Assembly (NCBI RefSeq): GCF_006345805.1
Contig: NC_043015.1
Coordinates: 49,724,001 to 49,788,000, forward strand
Length of the DNA: 64,000 nucleotides
Source of the DNA: Octopus sinensis
Lineage: Eukaryota
Reading direction: 5' to 3'
Shown here: in pieces, positions 361-50,267 of the stretch
How positions within the stretch are numbered: position 1 is the first letter of the stretch
How the letters are laid out: each line of letters starts with the position of its first letter
Translations under genes and position numbers: made by a program
The notes under the pieces: generated by a model
Databases searched by the model: none
What the model was told of the DNA's origin: nothing
The model's input: only the letters and a program-made list of their open reading frames with translations

Positions 361-936
361 TTTCTTATTTCTTTACTGCCCAGAAGGGGCTAAACGCAGA
401 AGGGACAGACAAACGGATTAAGTCGATTATATCGACCCCAGTGCGTAACTAGTATTTATTTAATCGACCCTGAAACGATGAAAGGCAAAGTCGACCTCGG
501 CGGAATTTGAACTCAGAACGTAGCGGCAGACAAAATACCTATTTCTTTACTACCCACAAGGGGCTACACACAGACAAAGGGATTAAGTCGATTATATCGA
601 CCCCAGTGCGTAACTGGTACTTATTTAATCGACCCCGAAAGGATGAAAGACAAGGTTGACCTCGGCGGAATTTGACTCAGAACGTAAAGACGAGCGAAAT
701 ACCTATTTCTTTACGACCCACAAGGGGCTAAACACAGAAGGGACAAACAAGGACAGACAAAGGGATTAAGTCGATTATATCGACCCCAGTGCGTAACTGG
801 TACTTATTTAATCGACCCCGAAAGGATGAAAGGCACAGTCGACCTCGGTGGAATTTGAACTCAGAACGTAACGGCAGACGAAATACGGCTACGCATTTCG
901 CCCGGCGTGCTAACGGTTCTGCCAGCTCGCCGCCTT
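361..936 (-). mobile_element. SINE family B tandem trimer (one head, three bodies)
   Basis: Head aaggcggcgagctggcaga.. at 936 with B-box gagttcaaattcc; three ~170-190 bp bodies joined at aagaaatag|gtattt. Confidence 0.9.
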
Positions 937-16104: not shown

Positions 16105-16270
16105 ATCTTTTCTACTGGAAGCACAAGGCCTCAAATTTGGGGGAAAGGATTAAGTTGATTACATCGACCCCAGTACGCAACTGGTACTTAATTTATCAAC
16201 ACCGAAAGGATGAAAGGCAAAGTCGACCTCGGTAGAATTTGAACTCAGAACGTAAAGACGGACGAAATGC
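16105..16270 (-). mobile_element. SINE-B (tail type 2), head truncated
   Basis: Minus strand ends cccccaaatttgaggccttgtgcttccagtagaaaaga(tta)n. Confidence 0.8.
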
Positions 16271-16886
16271 GACGAGTTGGCAGAAACGTTAGCACGCCGG
16301 GCGAAATGCGTAGCCGTATTTCGTCTGCCGTTACGTTCTGAGTTCAAATTCCGCCGAGGTCGACTTTGCCTTTCATCCTTTCGGGGTCGATTACATAAGT
16401 ACCAGTTACGCACTGGAGTCGATGTAATCGACTTAATCCGAGTGTCTGTCCTTGTTTGTCCCCTCAGTGTTTAGCTCCTTGTGGGTAGTAAAGAAATAGG
16501 TATTTCGTCTGCCGTTACGTTCTGAGTTCAAATTCCGCCGAGGTCGACTTTGCCTTTCATCCTTTCGGGGTCAATTAAATTAAATGAGCACCAGTTACGC
16601 ACTGGGGTCGATGTAATCGACTTAATCCGAGTGTCTGTCCTTGTTTGTCTCCTCAGTGTTTAGCTCATTGTGGGTAGTAAAGAAATAGGTATTTCGTCTG
16701 CCGCTACGTTCTGAGTTCAAATTCCGCCGAGGTCGACTTTACCTTTCTTTCTTTCGGGGTCAATAAATTAAGTACCAGTTACGCACTGGGGTCGGTGTAA
16801 TCGACTTAATCCCTTTGTCTGTCCTTGTTTGTCCCCTCTGTGTTTAGCCCCTTGTGGGCAGTAAAGAAATAAGAAATAAAAATAAG
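16271..16886 (+). mobile_element. SINE-B tandem trimer
   Basis: Head gacgagttggcagaaacgttagc; two aagaaatag|gtatttcg junctions (~16500, ~16690). Confidence 0.9.
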
Positions 16887-19276: not shown

Positions 19277-19653
19277 GCCGTTGTTGGTTTGTCTCCTTTC
19301 AAATTAAGTTTAGATATAAGGAGAAAGAGATGAAACTTAGTACAGTTTCTTACATAAGCAAAAGGTCATAGGGTTTTAACGGATGTTTGAATATGATTGT
19401 GCGGCATTCGTGCCTTCATCAAAGCTTCCAACAGACAGCATTGATTATGCAAAACATGCTTCTTTCAACTAAAGGAGGCTGAAGGGTAACTTGTAATGTT
19501 TATGCCTTTTACCAATGATATTAGTAGTTTCTCTGAAGTGAAATAGTTACAATACGGAGCTAAAATCTGCTCACAGAATCAGCTTACTGAATCCATTTGT
19601 AGTAGAATCAGTACTTACTTACTTGTACTTGTGGCGACATTCACCCTGGGCGG

Positions 19654-19847
19654 CTGGCAGAAACGTTAGCACGCTGGGCGAAATGCGTAGCCGTATTTCG
19701 TCTGCCGTTAAGTTCTGAGTTCAAATCCCGCCGAGGTCGACTTTGCCTTTCATCCTTTCGGGGTCGATAAATTAAGTACCAGTTACGCACTGGGGTCGAT
19801 GTAATCGACTCAATCCGTTAGTCTGTCCTTGTGGGTAATAAAGAACA
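19654..19847 (+). mobile_element. SINE-B monomer with 18-bp TSD
   Basis: gacattcaccctgggcgg at 19636-19653 and 19848-19865. Confidence 0.9.
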
Positions 19848-20113
19848 GACATTCACCCTGGGCGGGTTGAGTCGGCTTCTTCCACCACCCTCGAGGCATC
19901 TCGAACCAAAGGTGGAAGAAGTTTCGTGGGAATATGTGGATTTCACAAGCGGTCCCCAACAATCCCGCATGTAGAGACATCCTCTTTGCCGCAGATTGTC
20001 CGCAGACCGCAGGGACAGAACGACGGAGGAGCCGCCGGTTGCCGAAACAGACACTCCGAGGATTTTCACCAGTTGTGAAAATGCCGAGTTGTGGCCCGAA
20101 TACCACTCGGTGT

Positions 20114-20231
20114 GAGACCAATCCGCCTTGGGTGGCCCTACCAGGAACCGAAGTTCCCGACGGCATAGCTCTGACACTACCCGTTGCCAGCGTCCCCACC
20201 ACGGTGAGGAGGGGATGGACTTTGGGGACGC
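20114..20231 (-). ncRNA. Putative HDV-like self-cleaving ribozyme at the 5' end of the retroposon
   Basis: P1 GCGUCCCCA/UGGGGACGC(U); P3-L3 CCCC-UCCUCACC-GUGG; GG-CAAC; P4 GGGU..ACCC with GGAAC-UUCG-GUUCC; GGCGGA with candidate catalytic C at 20125; P2 AGUCCA/UGGUCU. Manual fold only. Confidence 0.55.
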
Positions 20232-20682
20232 AGAATCAGTACACAGAAAATTGACTTCACAATTCCTCACATACGACAAGTTGCAGTGCCCTTGATACGG
20301 AACAATACTGAAGGGCACTCAATAAAGACTTCCAGAAGTATTTCGTAGAAATAAAGGATTTACAACGGAATATTTAAAATATTATATATTATTAATCCCA
20401 AACGACAATGGATTAAAGAATTGGTAATATCGGATAAACGATATATTGCAACGCTTTGTTATGGTAGCTTTGTGGTCTGAGATGAAATTCTGAACGCAGA
20501 GCTAAAAGAAATGCCACTTGACACCTCATCCGACACTCTGATGATTTCTTCGGTTCTGTATTCTAGAATAACAGTTTCAAATTTTGGCACAAGTTCGGGG
20601 AGGGGGGAGGTAGGAGTTAAGTCGATTACATCGACTCCCAGTGTTCAACTGGTCCTTATTTTAATTGAATGATAGTTTATAT

Positions 20683-25529: not shown

Positions 25530-26561
25530 ATGGCATTGAAACGAGCTGCTGGCTCTTCCCTCCTTCTTGCAACACCCCCCCCCCCCCCCACAAGAACAAA
25601 AAAAAATAACGTCACGGGTTACGAACAACCCATTTCAGGCCGTAAAAGGCAACAGAGCTCCTCCTTCCGAACCGGAGAGCACGCGCTCGGTTCAAAAGGA
25701 GAATGCAAGCCAGGACGTCGCGTTCGACGTAATTCTCGATTTTCCCCCTCTGCCTTCACCCAATGCTTTGGTACGGAAGGAGGAGGAAAAAAAACATTAC
25801 AAAAATCATCACAAACATTGACACGAGAAAAAAGAAAAAACTTCCAACAATTTTGCTTCTGCTGCGAAGCAAATTTCGGAGGAAGTTAAGATAACTCTAG
25901 AAGATGTGAAAAGAGCGAAGGAGTTGTTGAGGAAGGATGGCAATGGCATCTTCCTCAATACTCCACAAGAGGGATTGAAAGCACCAACAAAGACAATAAT
26001 TTACAAAGTTTTCGACAGAAAACTAAAAAGAATAACAAATGCCACACCCCAACATTGGAGATAGCTCTAAAGCCCATTTGGGCCCAAAAGAGCTACGTAA
26101 CCAAGGGGAAGCGTTTTGGAACCGTGGAGGTTCGCTTCCCAACAGAGGAGCTTGCAAGGGCGAACGCCATTTCGCCCTTGCAAACTGAGATTTGTTACTA
26201 GTTCCGACCCACCTCGGGCGAAGAGTAACAAAAATAAAATCGACCTCGCCCCCCCTGAGCTAGATATGTCATGGCTGGTGGCAGCTGTCCTCTATGATAT
26301 AGAGGACACTACCACCATTCTAGATGTCAGGAGAGTGAGGGCGAAAAACTGGTTGGGGATGGGAGTGCTGCTTCTTGCGCAAATTCAGCAAGAGAAATAT
26401 AAGTAAAGTCCCTGATTTCGTAAGTTTGCCGGACGGCACCAGGCTAAACGTTGCTGTGGAGGGGCGAAAGCCAAAATGTTTCCTCTGCAGCAGCGAAAGC
26501 CACTTAAAGAGGGACTGTCCCATTCACAAAAAGAGGATGGAGGCTTTCAGCAAGAGGCAGC

Positions 26562-26597
<36 letters not shown>

Positions 26598-27406
26598 CAA
26601 CAACAACAACAGAACAACAAAAAAACAGCAAGAAACCCAAAGGCTGCCACACCACCAACACCATCACCAACACCAGCACCAAGACGACCACACCACCACT
26701 CCAACAACAACAACCACCACCAACCAACACCGACAACCACCACAACAACAACACCGACACCAGTACCTCGAAGGTCGACAGCAGCGACATCAACAGTAAC
26801 AGGAGCAGCGGCACCACCGATACCGGCGGAACCAAAAACTTTTCGTCCTGCTACTGAAGCAGACCCCTCAACCATTCCTTTGCCGGATGAAGAGATCTCG
26901 GATTGTGCGAGCTCTGATTCCAACAAAGGAGAATGGAACATAGTGCCTCCAAAAAGAAAAGGAGGAAAAACAAAAAGATTTACAGGGGAAACACGAACAA
27001 ATAGTACTTCCCAACAACAACAACATCAACACACACACACTCACAACAACACAACAACAACAAAACACTTTCGACACCACTACTACTGCACTACCACAGA
27101 CACAAACAAACACAGCCACAATTACAGACACGATTACAGCAGTAAATACAAGAAACCAGGAACTGGTTGAGTATTTGAAAAACAAAACAAGCACAAACAT
27201 TAACGATTTCATAATACCTACACACAACACACCACCAGCACACATTCTCACAATAAATAAACAAAACAGTTTACAACGAAATAAAACAAATATTCCCTAA
27301 CGATGTGGGATCGTTAGGGAAAAGTTTCTCTCAGAAACTTTACAAAAATATTATTGAAGCACCCGTGCAAAAGCACAGGGAGCCACCCCCACCACCAACA
27401 CAGTAA
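25530..27406 (+). pseudogene. Tx1 ORF1 (gag-like nucleic-acid binding protein), frameshifted
   Basis: Starts MALKRAAGSS; RRM-like KRFGTVEVRFPTEELAR; VAVEGRKPK-CFLCSSESHLKRDC (CX2CX4HX4C); N/T/H-rich low-complexity C-terminal third; several frameshifts and stops. End point approximate. Confidence 0.8.
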
Positions 27407-27451
27407 GTAGAGCTTTTTTTCTCCTTTTTTTTTCCCCCTAACTTTTGAAAC

Positions 27452-30400
27452 ATGGCAAATCTTAGAATCGGTTGCTTGAATGTGAGAGGCCTCGGGTCAC
27501 CTTGGAAACAGGGTCACCTGTTAAACGACCTGAGGTTTCATGATGTGGATGTAGCAGCCATCAGTGAAACCAGGCTCTCCGACCCGCAGGAACTCGCAGC
27601 CCTTTTCGGCGGATACGAGATATTTCTATCTCCGTGTCGGCCGGGAGCGGGCGGTGGTGGTACTGCGGTGTTGTTTCGGAAGGGCCTGGACCTGAAAATA
27701 AGGACAGTCTTCTTGGATCCGGAAGGTAAGTTGGTGGTCCTCGACGTCGACGGTAGTGACGGCGGTGCTTTCAGACTGCTGGCTGCCTACGCTCCGACAG
27801 GAGCAGGGCAGTCGGATTATTTCAAACGTCTGGAAGTTTTCCTGGGAACGTCACGCACTCTAGTACTAGTTGGGGATTGGAACGCTGTCTTAGACGAACG
27901 TTTCGATCGGGTGGGCAGGGGAGCGTCTGATAGGAGAGGGGGAGGGTGCAAGAGCCTCGCCAACCTACTCGGCCGCTTTCAGCTGTCCGACAGGTTTCGA
28001 CTAGACAACCCGAATGTGCCAATGTGGACTTGGACAACCGCATCGGGTCGTCTAGATCGTACTTAGATAGAGTGTTTTGTAGGCCAGCGGATAGGACAGG
28101 GTAGGGTGTCCACAATTCCACCTAGTCGAATATACGGACCACAAATTAGTGATCTGTACGGTCGACTTAGATAGGCTACATAGACAGGGACCCGGCTACT
28201 GGAAGCTGAACGCGTCGTTAACGGCGTGCAAAGCTTACAGAGACCGGATTAGTTTACTAGTTAAGCGGGCGCTCACGGGGGCAATCATCAACAACAACTG
28301 GTGGTTTGCCCTCAAGAGAGCAATTAGAGTAGAGTCGATTAGGTATAGTAAGACTCTAGCTATTGAACGTAGGAAGAGAGAGCGGGATTTAGTTAAGAAA
28401 CTAGACGAGGCTCTTGACACTGGCATCGCGACCGACGTGTTGGCAGCAAGGTTGGCCCTCGACCAACACTTCGACGCCAAACACGAAGGCTGCGTTGTCA
28501 GAGCTAAGCACGTTCGCTAAGCGGGGAGGGGACTAGAGCCGCTCGATGGGCCCGCGTGGCGGAGGCGAAGCGAGGCAACAGAGCAACCATTCGGTCTTTG
28601 GTGGACCAGAACGGGCGCGAGGTTACCCAACCGAAGCAGATGTGTACGGTGCTTCAGCGGCACTTTGCTCAACTATTTGGGACGAGCGGTGGAACGGACA
28701 CCAACGGTACAGACTTCGGTGTGTACCTGGACGGACTGCCGCAACTCTCGGACAGCGAGGCAGAGTGCTGCGAAGGACCGATATCTGCCTGGGAAGTACA
28801 GGAAGCGATGAAGAGTTGCACGAGAGGTAGATCGCCGGGTTTGGATGGTCTGCCCTACGAGCTTTACTTTTCAATGCCAGACTTGTTTGCGGACCTGTTG
28901 GCAAACGTCTACTGCAACTGGCAGCAAAACGGGAGAATTCCTGCTTTTCTGTCGAGGGGTGGTGGCTTTGCTAAAGAAGGACCCAAACAAGGGGGCCGTT
29001 ATAGGGAATTTCCGGCCCATCACTCTGCTCAATGCAGAGTTGAAGATTTTGGCCAAGGTGCTAGCCAAGAGATTGGCGCTTGTCGTGGACAAGCTGGTCG
29101 GCGAGACGCAGACATGCGCCGTGCCGACCAGGTCGATACACGACAACCTCCATCTCATGCGCTACATCATAGAGAGGGTGGGTAACGACGCTGGCGCGGT
29201 GGCTTTGATCAACTTGGATCAGAGTAAAGCCTTCGATAGGGTCGACCATCGGTACCTGGCAGCTGTCCTCAAGGCAGCCGGCTTCGGTCCAGTCTTCCGC
29301 GCGGTGGATCGCTGCTTTATACAGCAACATCTGCTCAGTGATACGGGTGAACGGTCACCTTTCGGAACCGTTCGACATCTCGCGTTCGGTCCGCCAAGGA
29401 TGCCCTCTCTCCTCCCTCTTATACATTTTGACTCTCGAGCCATTACTGCGCAAGTTGGAGGCTTTGAGGGGTATCCCGCGCGATCTAGGAGGCGGAAACA
29501 GCGTGTCTGCTTATGCCGACGACGTCACCGTGGTGGTGTCGAGCCACAGGCACATTGGCCTGATTGGCGAGACGCTAAACCAGTACGAAGCGGTGACAGG
29601 GGCAAAGATTAACGCGGAAAAGTCTGTGGGCTTGCAACTGGGCACCTGGAGAGGCAAGCCCATGCCGTCCAACAGCGTCGTAGGGCGCTGGACAGACGGA
29701 CCCGTTAAACTGCTCGGGGTCTGGTTCGGTCCGGACCTCCAGGTGGATAAGAACTGGAAGAGGTGACGAGCAGGGTGGCACGTCTCACCCAGAAATGGGC
29801 CGAGAGGAAGCTGTCCTGAAAGGTCGAGCGGAGGTGGCGAATGCGTACATCGCATCCGTCATCTATTACCGCTTGACCGTCGTCCCTTGTCCCGACCGCT
29901 GGTTGGCCAAGCTGGTACGCCTGCTCTTCGACTTTTTTGGAAGGGTCAGGTGCCACTGGTCAGGCGATCCATCTGCTGTCAACGACCGCTGAACGGAGGC
30001 CTTGGAATGCCGTGGTTACTGTTGCGCAGACATGCGCTCAGGCTGCGGCATCTCAAGCGCTTCCTAGACGGTGAACAGGTGTGGTCGTCTTTTGTCAGAC
30101 GCGATTTTCCGCAGCTCGTCTCTTTGACGGAACTGCAGACCTGGATCAAACGTAGACCGAGAAAGGGCGCTTGGCACCTCGAGTGCCGTCAAGCCCTCTC
30201 CGCCCTCCGCCAGGCGGGCAATGCGGTCGGTTACAGCTCCGCTCTAGCGTTCTATAGAGGGTTAGTGGAGGAAAATGCGACGACGTTCTCGGGGAAACTC
30301 TAGGCGTTGAAGATGACGAACTGTGCGGTCTGTTCGGGAGGACTTTCGGGCCGGGGCCGATGGATAATTTCCAGAGGTCTCTCGCTTGGCAGTGCTACCG

Positions 30401-30876
30401 AGGGGCTCTGCCTGTTCGAGATAAACTCTAACCGGCACGGAAGTGCCGTCAGCCGGGCCTGCCCGAGGTGTTGCCAGGACGACGAAACCGTTCTGCACGC
30501 ACTCGTCCAGTGCCCGAGTATTGCTGAAATATGGGTTTATGTCGAACAGCTACTGTCACGTGTAGGACGGATCCGACTATCGGCCGAATCCATAGTGAAG
30601 ATTGCCCCGCCGACCTCCTTTAACAAGGAGGGCGAGGCCGTTTTCTTGTGCCTAGTGGCTGTGGCGAAAGAGGTCGTGTGGTGGACTCGTTTGAAAGGGC
30701 TAAAGACAGACACTTTCCTCTTTGGTCAAGGCCTCATCAACTTTTTCAAGTTTCACTTGAAAAGGAAGATGAGGTTAGAGAGGAAAGTGCTGTCCGATAG
30801 CAAGTTTTATGAAAGGTGGGTGAATTGTGCGAGACTGGCCTGAATAAATGGACCAGTTCTCAGGTTTCGCCTGTGA
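27452..30876 (+). pseudogene. Tx1 ORF2: AP endonuclease, reverse transcriptase and C-terminal zinc finger; ~10 frameshifts
   Basis: APE motifs CLNVRGL, AISETRL, VGDWNAVLD, SYLDRVF, YTDHKLV; RT motifs SPGLDGLPYE, NFRPITLLNAELKILAKVLAKRL, LDQSKAFDRVDH, VRQGCPLS, AYADDVTV, LLGVWF; CPRCCQDDETVLHALVQCP. TGA at 30841 is premature because the 8740 copy reads AGC there. Confidence 0.93.
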
Positions 30877-31155
30877 TTTCAAAAAGGTAATACAAAAGGA
30901 GAAGAAAGGGGACTCTATACACCCCTTTTTTTTTGACCAGGCTCCCGTTGGCTTTTGTAGGGTTTTTTCCACCAGGAACCTTTCGAAACGTCTCCCCCTT
31001 TTGGGAGTTTTTCATTGTTGAATTTTATAAGTTGTTATAAAGATTTTTACTCGATGTTTTTAAAAAAACGGCAAAACCCTTTGTAACCTTTCGTCCTGTC
31101 TTGTCCCTTTATGTAATCATGCGTGTCAGCCCTTGTGGCCAATAAAAAAGAATTG

Positions 31156-31193
<38 letters not shown>

Positions 31194-31581
31194 CATTATT
31201 ATTATTATTATCATTTATATTGCACTTAAATATATTTGTACCTGAGAAAGACGAGAACACAAACGGAATTGAGGGAAGGAGACGGAAAACAAGACAAACG
31301 GCGTCCCGACGGGTATTTTTTTTTCATGGTGTTTATGAGTTATTATATGTTGTTGTTATTGTTATTGGTGGCTGTTGTTTTTGTTATTGGTAGTTGTTGT
31401 TTAGCTGTTGAACCAAATGACCAGCGTCCCCCTGCTGTGAACTCCGATATAAAATATTCCAGCGAAAATATCAAAAGAATTCTTTAATGTTATGCAGTCT
31501 GTGATTTTGGGGGAAAAAAACTAGAAAAAACAAAAATAGTAATAAACTAAAAACACTCATATAAAACACGAAGAATCGCTT

Positions 31582-43865: not shown

Positions 43866-45509
43866 TACGAAGCCAGTTAATGTTATTTTGCTACCTACGT
43901 CTGGTCCATTCTGATTCATTAGTTTTCAAATCGTTTCTGGTTAGATTGCAGATCATTTGAATAATATACGCTAGACTATCATATGCATAATACAGCGAAA
44001 TGAAACAGATTAACTGAAGTTATGGCACATACATATATTTCTTTACTACCCACAAGGGGCTAAACACAGAGGGGAACAAATAAGGACAGACAAACTGATT
44101 AAGTCGATTACATCGACCCCAGTAAATAACAGGTACTTAATTTATCGACCCCGAAAGGATGAAAGGCAAAGTCGACCTCGGCGGAATTTGAACTCAGAAC
44201 GTACCGACAGACGAAATACCTGTTTATTTATTACCTACAAGGGGCTAAACAAAGAGGGGACAAACAAGGACAGACAAACGGATTAAGTCGATTACATCGA
44301 CCCCAGTAAGTAACAGGTACTTATTTAATCGACCCCGAAAGGATGAAAGGCAAGGTCTACCTCGGCGTAAATTAAACTCAGAATGTAACGGCAAGCGAAA
44401 TACGGCTACGCATTTCGCCCGGCGTGCTAACGTTTCTGCCATGTCGCCGCCTTCTTTTTAGAGTCAGCAGAAGTTCGCTATAACCTTCTGCCAGAACTGC
44501 GTGGACTTTAGGTGTTTCGCTCATAAACACACACGTCGCCCGGTCTAATATTCGAACCTCGTCCGTGAGTCCGCTGCTCTAACCACTAGGCCATGCGCCT
44601 CCACATACGAAGCCAGTTAATGTTATTTTGCTGCCTACGTCTGGTCCATTCTGATTCATTAGTTTTCAAATCGTTTCTGGTTAGATTGCAGATCATTTGA
44701 ATAATATACGCTAGACTCTCATATGCATAATACAGCGAAATGAAACAGATTAACTCAAGTTATGGCACAGACATATTTCTTTACTACCCACAAGGGGCTA
44801 AACACAGAGGGGAGAAACCAGGACAGACAAACGGATTAAGTCGATTACATCGACCCCAGTAAGTAACTGGTACTTAATTTATCGACCCCGAAAGGATGAA
44901 AGGCAAAGATGGACAGACAGATATATACAACAGGCTTGCACAACATATATATATCCGTCAAATTCATTCACAAGACATTGGTCAGCCCGAGGCTGTATAG
45001 TATACTGTAAAAGACACTTGCCCAAGGTACCGCGTAGCAGGACAGAAACCGAAACCACATGGTTGCAAAGCGAGCGACTTTACCAGTTAGAGCACAGACA
45101 ATTATGTCTGTGCCATAACTTGAGTTAATCTGTTTCATTTCGCTGTGTTATGTATATGAGAGTCTGGCATATATTATTCAAATGATCTGCAATCTAACCA
45201 GAAACGATTTGAAAACTAATGAATCAGAATAGACCAGACGTAGGTAGCAAAATAACATTAACTGGCTTCATAGGTGGAGGCACATGGCCTAGTGGTTAGA
45301 GCAGCGGACTCGCGGACGAGGTTCGAATCTCAGACCGGGTGACGTGTGTGTTTATGAGCGAAACACCTAAAGTCCACGCGGCTCTGGCAGAGGGTAATGG
45401 CGAAACTTCTGCTGACTCTGAAAAGAAGGCGGCGAGCTGGCAGAAACGTTAGAACGCCGGGCGAAATGCGTAGCCGTATTTCGTCTGGCGTTACGTTCTG
45501 AGTTCAAAT
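43866..45509. repeat. Local triplication: direct duplication plus inverted duplication including SINE-B and SINE-C pieces
   Basis: 43866-44170 repeats at 44606-44908; 44371-44774 is inverted at 45104-45509. Confidence 0.85.
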
Positions 45510-48109: not shown

Positions 48110-48340
48110 TGCATTGGTTTCAAATTTTGGCACAAAGCCGGCAATTTCGGGGAGAGGTGGGATGGGGGGTAAGTCGATTACATCAACCTCAGTGCTCAAT
48201 TGGAACTTGTTTTATTGACCCCGGAAGGATGCAAGACAGAGAGGACTCCCGCGAAATTTGAACTTAGAATGTAAAGACGGACGAAATGCCGCTAAGCATT
48301 TCGCCGGCGTGCTAACATTTTTGCCAGCTCGCCGTCTTAA
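48110..48340 (-). mobile_element. Old SINE-B (tail type 2), head-to-head with the next array
   Basis: aaattttggcacaaagccggcaatttcgggg..ccgctaagcatttcgccggcgtgctaacattttgccagctcgccgtc. Confidence 0.75.
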
Positions 48341-48364
48341 TATCTGCAGTATATTGGTATTCAT

Positions 48365-49162
48365 AAGGCGGCGAGCTGGCAGAAACGTTAACACGCCGGG
48401 CGAAATGCTTAGCGGTATTTCGTCTGCCGTTACATTCTGAGTTCAAATTCCGCCGAGGTCGACTTTGCCTTTCATACTTTCGGGGTCGATAAATTAAGTA
48501 CCAGTTAGGCACTGGGGTCGATGTAATCGACTTAATCCGTTTGTCTGTTCTTGTTGTGCTCTCTGTGTTTCGCCCCTTGTGGGTTGTAAAGAAATAGGCA
48601 TTTCGTCTGTCTTTACGTTCTGAGTTCAAATTTTACCGAGGTCGACTTTGCCGTTCATCCTATCGGGGTCGATTAAATAAGTACCAGTTACGCACTGGGG
48701 TCGATGTAATCGACTTAATCCGTCTGTTCTGTCCTTGTTTGTCTCCTCTGTATTTAGCCCCTTGTGGGTAGTAAAGAAATAGGTATTTCGTCTCCCGCTA
48801 CGTTCTGAGTTCAAATTCTGCGGAGGTCGACTTTGCCTTTCATCCTTTCGGGATCGATTAAATAACTACCAGTTACGCACTGGGGTCGATGTAATCGACT
48901 TAATCCGTTTGTCTGTCCTTGTTTGTCCCCTCTGTGTGTAGCTCCTTGTGAGCAGTAAAGAAATAAGAAACGTTAGCAAGCCGGGAGAAATGCTTAGCCG
49001 TATTTCGTCTGCCGTTACGTTCTGAGTTCAAATTCCGCCGTGGTCGACTTTGCCTTTCATCCTTCCGGGGTCCATAAATTAAGTAGCAGTTAAGTATTGG
49101 GGTTCAATCTAATTGACTGGCCCTCTCCCACCAAATTTCGGGCCTTGTGCCTAGAGTAGGAA
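48365..49162 (+). mobile_element. SINE-B tandem tetramer ending in tail type 2
   Basis: Junctions aagaaatag|gcatttcg (~48598), aagaaatag|gtatttcg (~48782), aagaaat|aagaaacgttagc (~48966). Confidence 0.9.
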
Positions 49163-49730: not shown

Positions 49731-50267
49731 TTTCTTTACTACCCACAAGGGGCTACACACAGAAGGGACAAACAAGGACAGACAAACGGATTAGGTCGAT
49801 TAGACAAACGGATTAAGTCGACCACGGCGGAATTTGAACTCAGAACGTAAAGACAGGCGAAATACTGCTAAGCATTTCGCCCGGCTTGCTAACGTTTCTT
49901 ATTCTTTACTACCCACAAGGGGCTAAACAGAGAGAGGACAAACAAGGACAGACATCGGATTAAGTCGATTATATCGACCCCAGTGCGTAACTAGTACTTA
50001 TTTAATCGACTCCGAAAGGATGAAAGGCAAAGTCGACCTCGGCGGAATTTGAACTCAGACGTAGCGGCAGACGAAATACATATTTCTTTACTACCCACAA
50101 GCGGCTAAACAGAGAGAGGACAAACAAGGACAGACAAACGGATTAAGTCGATTAGACAAACGGATTAAGTCGACCTCGGCGGAATTTGAACTCAGAACGT
50201 AGCGGCAGACGAAATACTGCTAAGCAATTCGCCCGGCGTTCTAACGATTCTGCCAGCTCGCCGCTTT
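49731..50267 (-). mobile_element. SINE-B trimer flanked by a 17-bp TSD
   Basis: atataccgtgtttctta at 49714-49730 and 50268-50284; two of the three bodies carry an internal deletion. Confidence 0.88.

What the first reader, a model, noticed from the sequence alone, without database searches (positions are those of the whole stretch)
19604..20242. Ribozyme-headed, non-coding RTE-like retroposon with an HDV-type fold at its exact 5' end
Seen: an 11-bp TSD (agaatcagtac) delimits a ~405 nt minus-strand element, after removing a nested SINE, that ends in (aagt)n. Its first ~118 nt contain, in HDV order: P1 (GCGUCCCCA/UGGGGACGCU), a P2 strand, P3-L3 (CCCC-UCCUCACC-GUGG), GG-CAAC, a P4 closed by GGGU/ACCC with a cUUCGg hairpin, GGCGGA (cf. 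HDV GGCGAA; candidate catalytic C at 20125), and the second P2 strand. Further hairpins follow (AUUUUCAC/GUGAAAAU, CCGAG/CUCGG, UCUUCCACC/GGUGGAAGA). Known: HDV-like ribozymes process the 5' ends of R2, RTE and trypanosome ingi/L1Tc elements, and R2 has produced ribozyme-headed non-autonomous derivatives in Drosophila. Inference: this may be a SINE-like parasite that uses self-cleavage instead of a Pol III promoter; I do not recall one described in octopus. Caveats: P1 could pair 9-10 bp rather than the usual 7, P2 and P3 each have one mismatch, and the G+1 is missing in this copy.
Basis: partly seen in the sequence, partly recalled or inferred. Interest (0 to 1): 0.75.

Follow-up and report, generated by a model that had tools for sequence, protein, structure and literature searches.

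The report
Retroposon with possible ribozyme 5' end
This is one copy of a roughly 400-base non-coding jumping element, also found in a second species, whose first 117 bases can fold like a known type of self-cutting RNA; that would explain how it gets a precise start without its own promoter, but the self-cutting is plausible rather than shown, and the general trick is already known in other animals.

Summary
The sequence observation holds. An 11-bp target-site duplication bounds a minus-strand element at 20231..19615. It is 405 nt once a nested 194-nt tRNA-type SINE is removed, and it ends in ACAAGTACAAGTAAGTAA.

New evidence: six related copies were recovered from another, unidentified eukaryote (ENA assembly ERZ21867824). 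This is therefore a real non-coding retroposon family of about 400 nt. It has a shared 3' two-hairpin module and tail. In the three copies with clean duplications, the 5' ends lie within about 9 nt of each other. Core nt 44-117 is 97% identical between the two lineages, against 50-82% elsewhere.

The ribozyme reading is only partly supported.
- For: P1 starts exactly at the element's first base. The only ribozyme hit in Rfam is an HDV-family model aligned from that base. J4/2 is CGGA, matching the published CRRA. Lineage differences fall at positions the model leaves free.
- Against: the Rfam score is 15.6 bits against a threshold of 44. My tolerant descriptor matches about once per shuffled window. 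Either P3/L3 register breaks one fixed feature. No copy from the second species keeps the P1 5' strand. A competing rod fold exists.

"RTE-like" is untested and no autonomous partner was found. Ribozyme-headed short elements are already known in Drosophila and trypanosomatids.

The parts
20232..20242 (-). Upstream copy of the 11-bp target-site duplication (GTACTGATTCT on the minus strand)
   Evidence: Identical to 19604-19614
19615..20231 (-). Whole retroposon copy: 617 nt, or 405 nt without the nested SINE and one copy of its duplication
   Evidence: Bounded by the TSD. Six homologous copies exist in the loci L009-L014
20115..20231 (-). Candidate HDV-like ribozyme domain (core nt 1-117)
   Evidence: Pairings verified. 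RF02682 aligns from 20231. Pair counts on 4 copies are
20223..20231 (-). P1 5' strand (GCGUCCCCA, core 1-9). The proposed cleavage site is just 5' of 20231
   Evidence: 9/9 Watson-Crick pairs with 20190-20198. C8-G35 here against U8-A35 in L009
20215..20221 (-). P2 5' strand (core 11-17)
   Evidence: Pairs with 20115-20121. The U13xU115 mismatch is kept in all copies. A17 in the second species adds a pair
20198..20214 (-). P3-L3-P3' region (core 18-34). Two registers are possible. Rfam register: P3 = 23-24 with 32-33, L3 = UCACCGU.
   Evidence: The second-species L3, UCAACGU, matches 6 of 7 bases of the RF02682 consensus
20190..20197 (-). P1 3' strand (core 35-42)
20183..20189 (-). U43 linker, GG of P1.1 (core 44-45) and CAAC (core 46-49)
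   Evidence: UGGCAAC aligns to AGGCAAC of RF02682. Conserved in 5 of 7 copies
20127..20183 (-). P4 domain (core 49-105), including the GGAAC-UUCG-GUUCC hairpin at 20144-20157
   Evidence: It lies within the block that is 97% identical between lineages
20122..20125 (-). J4/2 CGGA. The candidate catalytic C is core 107 = 20125
   Evidence: Matches C-R-R-A of the published descriptor (PMC6326823). Unchanged in 6 of 7 copies
20115..20121 (-). P2 3' strand (core 111-117)
20110..20177 (-). Competing rod-like fold of core 55-122. It takes up C107 and part of the P2 3' strand
   Evidence: RNAalifold consensus with one compensatory change: C58-G119 in the second species, U58-A119 here. It is the minimum-energy fold in second-species copies but not in this one
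19876..19921 (-). 3' stem-loop (core 311-356)
   Evidence: z = -3.44 against shuffles. Comparable hairpin architecture in L010
19855..19867 (-). Small conserved hairpin ACCC-N5-GGGU (core 365-377)
19654..19847 (+). Nested tRNA-derived SINE, a later insertion. Its 18-bp duplication lies at 19636-19653 and 19848-19865
19615..19632 (-). Tail ACAAGTACAAGTAAGTAA
   Evidence: The same tail is present in L009, L011 and L012
19604..19614 (-). Downstream copy of the 11-bp target-site duplication

Best explanation
This is an old, dead copy of a short non-autonomous non-LTR retroposon of about 400 nt, of the 'short internally deleted element' type. It has three modules.

1. A 5' domain (core 1-117) that is, or descends from, an HDV-like self-cleaving ribozyme.
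2. A poorly conserved non-coding middle.
3. A 3' module of two hairpins followed by an (ACAAGT)(AAGT)n tail.

Proposed mechanism (inferred):
- The element has no promoter of its own and is transcribed by read-through from upstream.
- The nascent RNA folds into the double pseudoknot and cuts itself just 5' of G1 (window 20231). The general acid would be C107 (window 20125).
- A LINE reverse transcriptase supplied in trans recognises the 3' hairpins and tail, and copies the RNA at a nicked target.
- This produces the 11-bp duplication and, when copying is complete, a 5' junction that starts at the P1 base.
- Imprecise 5' joining removes or replaces the first few bases in many copies, so most new copies lose P1.

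Shown here: the element boundaries, the family, its non-coding nature, the conserved 3' module, and strong conservation of core 44-117.

Inferred: self-cleavage, read-through transcription, and the identity of the partner.
For: - Boundaries and size.
- Family in two lineages with the same 3' end and tail.
- Clean TSDs in L009 (CTTGTACAACT) and L012 (GTATGCATGT) place their 5' ends within about 9 nt of the window copy's.
- P1 is 9/9 Watson-Crick pairs and begins at the first base after the TSD. The window's 5' strand matches its own P1 3' strand at the three positions where that strand differs from the second species (35, 39, 42). Pair 8-35 is C-G here and U-A in L009.
- Of 4227 Rfam families, the only ribozyme hit is HDV-F-prausnitzii (RF02682). 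It is a global alignment of model positions 1-74 starting at 20231, with E = 0.66 for all families in 151 nt. That is roughly 1e-3 if only about ten HDV-type families are counted (the count of families is my estimate).
- J4/2 CGGA matches the published CRRA. GG follows P1. L3 in the Rfam register keeps U, C, C and G of the fixed U-C-C-N-C-G-N (PMC6326823).
- All 7 lineage differences in core 9-43 fall at positions the model leaves free or paired. A post hoc count gives p about 0.012.
- Core 44-117 is 72/74 identical between lineages, against 50-82% elsewhere. Individual second-species copies decay by about 5-13% per segment across core 44-405, so the masters were under selection.
- T4/T5 runs and the absence of any small-RNA head argue against Pol III.
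- Variable 5' junctions are what the R2 literature reports when cleavage is at the element's own 5' end (PMC3774820).
Against: - The Rfam score is 15.6 bits against a gathering score of 44. Part of that alignment places the model's J4/2 on the wrong bases. No other HDV-type model hits.
- No HDV-family hit appears in the second-species copies L009 and L011.
- The tolerant descriptor is met about 0.75 times per shuffled 64-kb window and 4 times in the real one. The strict version (perfect P3) is not met.
- P1 would be 8-9 bp, not 7.
- The U13xU115 mismatch in P2 is conserved.
- None of six second-species copies has a P1 5' strand complementary to its own 3' strand.
- The most conserved part is P4, which is normally the most variable part of these ribozymes (PMC3774820).
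- A nested rod fold of core 55-122 has its own compensatory change and sequesters C107.
- The copies were found through an ORF spanning core 30-180, so shorter 5'-truncated copies could not have been seen.
Confidence: 0.55

Rival explanations
1. Same retroposon family, but the 5' domain is not a ribozyme. It is a terminal hairpin (1-9 with 34-42) followed by a conserved rod-like stem-loop (55-122). This would serve another purpose, for example binding the partner's proteins or acting as an internal Pol II promoter or 5' UTR signal. The HDV-like strand order would then be coincidence.
For: - RNAalifold's consensus for the conserved block is the rod, with a compensatory change at 58-119. The rod is the minimum-energy fold in second-species copies.
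- P4-equivalent bases are 97% conserved, which is unlike a typical P4.
- Descriptor matches occur at chance frequency.
- Rfam is below threshold, and there is no hit in L009 or L011.
- Second-species copies lack P1.
Against: - It does not explain why nine bases at the very 5' end pair perfectly with the strand that sits immediately before GGCAAC.
- It does not explain why CRRA followed by a strand complementary to nt 11-17 sits where the HDV topology needs it, unchanged in both lineages.
- The rod is not more stable than shuffles (z -0.7 to -1.6) and is broken by C59xC118 in the window copy.
- The conserved block starts at nt 44, not at the 5' end as initiator-type internal promoters would.
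Confidence: 0.3
2. The HDV-like domain is a relic inherited from the 5' UTR of a ribozyme-bearing LINE and is no longer active in this short family. Copies would spread from a few read-through transcripts, and 5' ends would be set by other means.
For: - A fixed-feature defect is conserved in both lineages: A at core 27, and a pyrimidine-pyrimidine mismatch in P3.
- No second-species copy has P1.
Against: - Strong between-lineage conservation of J4/2, the P2 3' strand, GG and the key L3 bases implies continued selection on the masters.
- The window copy starts exactly at the P1 base.
Confidence: 0.1
3. A randomly 5'-truncated piece of a long LINE 3' UTR, or a Pol III SINE with an unrecognised small-RNA head.
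For: - Only seven copies were seen.
- One copy, L010, appears truncated at about core 34, with a low-complexity TSD.
- The search method could not find shorter copies.
Against: - Three clean TSD-bounded copies in two species end within 9 nt of each other at the 5' side.
- No longer version appears in 170 kb.
- No tRNA, 5S or 7SL match.
- T4/T5 runs lie inside the element.
Confidence: 0.05

Closest known systems
R2 SIDE elements of Drosophila (short internally deleted R2 and R2/R1 hybrids; PMC3414825, seen as an abstract)
   Same: - Short non-coding derivative that keeps a 5' HDV-like ribozyme and the 3' end needed for reverse transcriptase binding.
- Depends on a LINE in trans.
- Transcribed by read-through.
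   Different: - R2 SIDEs insert site-specifically in 28S rDNA and have a known parent.
- This family is dispersed, with different TSD sequences in each copy.
- It has a microsatellite tail and no identified parent.
NARTc / RIME / SIDER elements of trypanosomatids with the Pr77 / L1TcRz domain (PMC4035085)
   Same: - Dispersed short non-autonomous retroposons headed by an HDV-like ribozyme.
- Many copies have defective folds and are inactive.
- A downstream sequence can switch the ribozyme into another fold.
   Different: - Pr77 is 77 nt and doubles as an internal promoter.
- No sequence similarity to this element.
- This domain is 117 nt with a long, highly conserved P4.
[quoted passage not shown] 2011; known to me from its abstract and cited; the paper is not held)
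   Same: Ribozyme at the exact 5' terminus of a promoter-less non-LTR element.
   Different: - Those are autonomous, coding elements.
- Membership of the RTE clade could not be tested here.
drz-Fpra-1 / Rfam RF02682 (HDV ribozyme from F. prausnitzii)
   Same: - Best Rfam match.
- Shared P1 of 7 bp and an L3 of form U-C-N-N-C-G-U.
- Shared one-base linker followed by GGCAAC.
   Different: - It is bacterial and has a short P4.
- The score is 15.6 bits against the 44 needed.
- P3 here has a mismatch, and 5 bases separate P2 from P3.
Retrozymes, Penelope-like elements with hammerheads, and Schistosoma non-LTR elements with twister variants (PMC4918200; PMC7761336; PMC8501958)
   Same: Mobile elements that use a small self-cleaving RNA to process their transcripts.
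   Different: - A different ribozyme class.
- Retrozymes propagate through circular RNA.
- No hammerhead or twister match was found here.

Membership tests
HDV-like self-cleaving ribozymes | Strand order P1-P2-P3-L3-P3'-P1'-P1.1-P4-J4/2-P2' forming a nested double pseudoknot | tested here: met
   All strands are present in that order. 77-78% of cells are paired across 4 copies, against 27-59% when partners are slid by 1-3 columns.
HDV-like self-cleaving ribozymes | P1 of about 7 bp starting at the cleavage site (6-7 bp is typical in R2; PMC3774820) | tested here: inconclusive
   Window copy: 9 Watson-Crick pairs from nt 1. Second species: the 5' strand is absent or non-complementary in all six copies. 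There is one compensatory pair, 8-35.
HDV-like self-cleaving ribozymes | P3 of 3 bp next to P1' | tested here: not met
Rfam register: two C-G pairs plus UxU or UxC. The strict descriptor with a perfect P3 gives no match.
HDV-like self-cleaving ribozymes | L3 with fixed U, C, C, C, G (U-C-C-N-C-G-N) and two C-G pairs in P1.1 (PMC6326823) | tested here: not met
4 of 5 fixed bases in either register. That A, at core 27, is conserved in both lineages.
HDV-like self-cleaving ribozymes | J4/2 = C-R-R-A with the catalytic C, followed directly by the P2 3' strand | tested here: met
   CGGA at core 107-110, then UUGGUCU pairing with core 11-17. Unchanged in 6 of 7 copies.
HDV-like self-cleaving ribozymes | Score at or above an Rfam HDV-type gathering threshold | tested here: not met
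   RF02682 scores 15.6 bits against 44. No other HDV-type family appears at E <= 10.
HDV-like self-cleaving ribozymes | Site-specific self-cleavage abolished by changing the catalytic C to U | not testable with these tools
   Needs an in vitro transcription and cleavage assay.
Non-LTR retroposon inserted by target-primed reverse transcription | Target-site duplication, defined 3' end with a simple-repeat tail, and multiple dispersed copies | tested here: met
   TSDs of 11, 11 and 10 bp in three copies. Shared tail. Seven copies at unrelated sites.
Short internally deleted element (non-autonomous LINE derivative) | An autonomous LINE sharing the 5' and/or 3' ends | not testable with these tools
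   None appears in the 170 kb held. The window's LINE at 25.8-31.2 kb is unrelated. The source genome cannot be searched by DNA here.
RTE clade | Reverse transcriptase and endonuclease phylogeny of the partner, and a very short 3' UTR | not tested
   No partner is known. A short tandem-repeat tail is only suggestive.
Pol III SINE | Head derived from tRNA, 5S or 7SL with an internal promoter, and no internal T-run terminators | tested here: not met
   No such Rfam or ARAGORN match. A T4 run at core 151 in the window copy, and a T5 run near core 265 in 4 of 6 second-species copies.

The most novel reading that the evidence does not exclude
The 74-nt block that is 97% identical between lineages would be a two-state RNA. 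It would fold during transcription as an unusual HDV-like ribozyme, with an 8-9 bp P1, a two-pair P3, a one-pair P1.1 and a long sequence-constrained P4. After cleavage it would refold into the 55-122 rod, which recruits the partner's reverse transcriptase. A promoter-less, SINE-sized parasite would then carry both processing and recruitment signals in one domain, and would have persisted across species.
Probability: 0.15. Interest if true: 0.6.

Novelty: new member of a known kind. Interest (0 to 1): 0.4.

Why it matters
It would also give a compact, naturally conserved HDV-like variant with an unusual P3/P1.1 and a constrained P4 to test. No paper in the held library links HDV-like ribozymes to cephalopods or prints this sequence. 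The principle itself is established for R2 SIDEs and for trypanosomatid NARTc, RIME and SIDER elements, so the gain is taxonomic and structural rather than conceptual.

Tried and rejected
- Rfam at gathering thresholds over the whole window: nothing.
- In-window BLAST: only the nested SINE repeats; there is no second copy of the element.
- Protein search with the frame-0 translation, and word-indexed search with frame 2: nothing.
- The exhaustive HMMER search with frame 2 did work, and so did a profile search.
- Exact-pattern scans of JGI metagenomes gave 7 hits, all unrelated bacterial coding DNA. Scans of viral contigs and GTDB genomes gave nothing.
- Hits P0001, P0003 and P0004 are spurious repeat proteins.
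- Coding hypothesis: two sense frames are open end to end in this copy. I rejected it because the second-species consensus has stops in all frames and there is no codon-position bias.
- CpG decay as the explanation for the A at core 27: rejected, because the A is present in both lineages.
- Profile searches with the 5' block and the 3' module found no further copy or partner in 170 kb.
- A scan for (AAGT)n tails found only a 55-nt inverted fragment with a similar 3' motif next to the L013 copy.
- I tried to name the second species through a paper search and a Pfam scan of a large neighbouring ORF. I tried to name the window's host through an exact-protein look-up. All three failed.
- The key reviews by Webb and Luptak and by Ruminski and colleagues are not held.
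- I compared with HDV only through Rfam models and a published descriptor. I did not write out the viral sequence.
Full report
**1. The observation**

Read on the minus strand, GTACTGATTCT occurs at 20242-20232 and again at 19614-19604. Between the two copies lies a 617-nt element, 20231..19615.

Inside it is a tRNA-type SINE in + orientation at 19654-19847. It is flanked by an 18-bp duplication (19636-19653 and 19848-19865). Removing the SINE and one duplicate leaves exactly 405 nt at 57% G+C. The SINE gives 34 matches in the window, but the rest of the element has no second copy there. The element ends in ACAAGTACAAGTAAGTAA.

- P1 is 9/9 Watson-Crick pairs.
- P2 (11-16 with 117-112) is 5/6 pairs, with U13xU115 mismatched.
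- P1.1 is C23-G45 and C24-G44.
- GGCAAC lies at 44-49.
- P4 is closed by G50-U53 with A99-C102, plus C49-G105.
- A cUUCGg hairpin lies at 75-88.
- GGCGGA contains C107, which is window 20125.

**2. Is the fold more than chance?**

By itself it is not.
- The first 132 nt fold no better than shuffles, z = -0.09.
- Rfam at gathering thresholds finds nothing in the window.
- I wrote an HDV-type descriptor with the tolerance this sequence needs. It requires a 7-bp P1, a P3 with at most one mismatch, an L3 of form U-C-...-G, GG after P1, C-N-R-A, P2 of at least 5/6, and a P4 base. It matches 4 loci in the real window and 0-2 per dinucleotide shuffle, mean about 0.75. With a perfect P3 it matches nothing.

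What is not expected by chance is the position.
- The match begins on the first base after the duplication.
- At relaxed thresholds the only ribozyme family Rfam reports is an HDV-type model, RF02682. It is a global alignment of model positions 1-74 that starts at 20231.
- It scores 15.6 bits against a threshold of 44. E is 0.66 for 151 nt against all 4227 families. That is of the order of 1e-3 if only about ten HDV-type families are counted as the prior hypothesis; the count of families is my estimate.
- Part of that alignment is wrong, because it places the model's J4/2 just after GGCAAC. I therefore treat it as support for the 5' half only.

**3. Relatives from elsewhere**

No DNA search of the host genome is available here. 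I translated the element and searched proteins instead.
- Frame 0 gave nothing.
- An exhaustive HMMER search with frame 2 found four small spurious ORFs. A profile search found two more.
- All six come from long contigs (25-132 kb) of one ENA assembly, ERZ21867824. Their DNA was fetched as L008 to L014, where L008 and L014 are the same place.
- These contigs are AT-rich and lack the window's SINE, so they come from another species. I could not identify it.

Each locus holds one copy of the same element.
- The six copies are about 85% identical to each other and about 70% identical to the window copy.
- All share the 3' end GGTTCAACCCGACCAGGGTGAAAGCCGATACAAGTACA(A)AGTAAGTAAGT.
- A long hairpin and a small ACCC-N5-GGGU hairpin precede the tail in both lineages.

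Clean duplications bound two further copies.
- L009 has CTTGTACAACT, and the element starts TTAACCTAAAGTCC.
- L012 has GTATGCATGT, and the element starts CTACAAAAGTCC.
- The window copy starts GCGTCCCCAAAGTCC.

The three TSD-defined 5' ends therefore lie within about 9 nt of each other in two species.
- L011 and L014 keep homology to about nt 11-12.
- L010 seems truncated near nt 34.
- In L013, homology ends near nt 45, next to an inverted 55-nt fragment with a similar 3' motif.

One caveat applies. The copies were found through an ORF over nt 30-180, so shorter truncated copies could not have been detected.

**4. Non-coding, and not a Pol III SINE**
- Two sense frames are open from end to end in the window copy.
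- The second-species consensus has stops in all three frames.
- Substitutions between lineages are spread 26/28/25 over codon positions.
- There is no tRNA, 5S or 7SL similarity.
- T4 or T5 runs lie inside the element.

**5. Conservation pattern**

Identity between the window copy and the second-species consensus varies sharply along the element:

| Core nt | Identity |
|---|---|
| 9-43 | 76% |
| 44-117 | 97% (72/74) |
| 118-170 | 67% |
| 171-250 | 79% |
| 251-345 | 50% |
| 346-405 | 82% |

Individual second-species copies differ from their own consensus by about 5-13% per segment across core 44-405. The contrast therefore reflects selection on the master copies, not slow decay.

In the ribozyme model, the conserved block holds the P1.1 Gs, CAAC, all of P4, CGGA and the P2 3' strand.

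**6. How well the ribozyme model fits**

A published descriptor (PMC6326823) fixes:
- G1 paired with a pyrimidine
- a 7-bp P1
- a 3-bp P3
- L3 = U-C-C-N-C-G-N
- two C-G pairs in P1.1
- J4/2 = C-R-R-A

Here J4/2 is CGGA, an exact fit, and GG follows P1.

Two registers are possible for P3 and L3.
- *Rfam's register:* P3 is C23, C24 with G33, G32, plus a pyrimidine mismatch. L3 is UCACCGU in the window copy and UCAACGU in the second species, which is 6/7 identical to the RF02682 consensus UCUaCGU. This register keeps the essential U and G of L3. It leaves P1.1 with one pair and puts five bases between P2 and P3.
The essential L3 G becomes A27, and that A is present in both lineages, so it is not CpG decay.

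Each register breaks one fixed feature. Natural active variants with a P3 mismatch, altered L3 spacing and weak P1.1 are reported (PMC3774820; PMC4035085). This weakens but does not exclude activity.

The 'missing G+1' is not required if U43 is read as the one-base linker that RF02682 also has.

P1 gets some support from lineage comparison.
- The window's 5' strand matches its own 3' strand at the three positions where that strand differs from the second species (35, 39, 42).
- Pair 8-35 is C-G in the window and U-A in L009.
- All seven lineage differences in nt 9-43 fall at positions the model leaves free or paired. A post hoc count gives p about 0.012.

With four sequences, the pair statistics are only weakly above the controls.

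**7. What counts against it**
- None of the six second-species copies has a 5' strand that pairs with its own P1 3' strand. Rfam finds no HDV-type hit in L009 or L011. This can be explained by imprecise 5' joining, which the R2 literature describes for elements that cleave at their own 5' end (PMC3774820). It also fits a model with no ribozyme.
- The best-conserved part is P4, which is normally the least constrained.
- RNAalifold folds the conserved block as a rod, with 55-62 paired to 115-122 and further pairs inside it. This uses C107 and part of the P2 3' strand. It has its own compensatory change: C58-G119 in the second species and U58-A119 in the window.
- That rod is no more stable than shuffles, and it is broken in the window copy. 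It could be a post-cleavage alternative fold, as proposed for L1Tc, or it could be the real structure.

**8. Comparison with what is known**

[quoted passage not shown] So are short non-autonomous derivatives that keep the ribozyme: R2 SIDEs, NARTc, RIME and SIDER.

This family works like those, if it works at all. It differs in being dispersed, in its long constrained P4, and in having no known parent. I found no paper linking HDV-like ribozymes with cephalopods or printing this sequence.

'RTE-like' remains a guess based on the tail. The only LINE in the window, on the + strand at 25.8-31.2 kb, has a CCHC ORF1, an APE endonuclease, a reverse transcriptase and an (ATT)n tail, and it is unrelated.

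**9. Verdict**
- The retroposon family is real and non-coding.
- The HDV-like ribozyme is the best single explanation of its 5' domain, at about 0.55.
- A non-catalytic structured 5' domain is the main rival, at about 0.3.
- This is a new member of a known kind, of moderate interest.

Noticed in passing
window 25800-31210 (+): A LINE with a CCHC zinc-knuckle ORF1 near 26478, an APE endonuclease ORF at 27452-28066, a reverse transcriptase ORF at 28845-29612, frameshifted ORFs running to 30843, and an (ATT)n tail at about 31150-31210. It shares no sequence with the element.
   Followed up: partly
window 403-931; 16144-16828; 44082-44441; 48172-49118; 49772-50262: The tRNA-derived SINE nested in the element gives 34 matches in the window. 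Many are head-to-tail runs with about 185-nt spacing, which looks like SINE-derived tandem arrays rather than single insertions.
   Followed up: no
window 20110-20177 (-), and the same block in L009-L014: The conserved block can fold as a rod, with core 55-62 paired to 115-122. One compensatory change supports it: C58-G119 in the second species and U58-A119 in the window. This fold competes with P2 and sequesters the candidate catalytic C.
   Followed up: partly
L013 10182-10236 (-): A 55-nt inverted fragment ending ...CTCAACCTCCGGTGATATGATAAAAAGTAAGT abuts the point where the L013 copy loses homology. Its TCAACC...GGTGA...GATA...(AAGT)n pattern resembles the family's 3' end. It may come from a related family or from the partner LINE.
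   Followed up: no
window 19615-20231 (-), frames 0 and 2: Both sense frames are free of stop codons across the whole 405-nt core, up to TAA in the tail. The second-species consensus and the codon-position test show this is compositional, not coding.
   Followed up: yes
ENA assembly ERZ21867824 (loci L008-L014): A record filed as a metagenome assembly holds AT-rich eukaryotic contigs of 25-132 kb that carry this retroposon family, mariner-like and reverse transcriptase genes, and one called gene of 3806 aa with no Pfam match in the 2743 aa scanned. Some called genes do not translate in table 11. The organism was not identified.
   Followed up: partly
window 27603 (+), 32203 (+), 15922 (-): These are the other three loci that match the tolerant HDV-type descriptor. 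27603 lies inside the LINE endonuclease ORF. 32203 gave 13 clustered starts, which suggests repetitive sequence, though I did not inspect it. I take them as chance matches and used them as the in-window null.
   Followed up: partly
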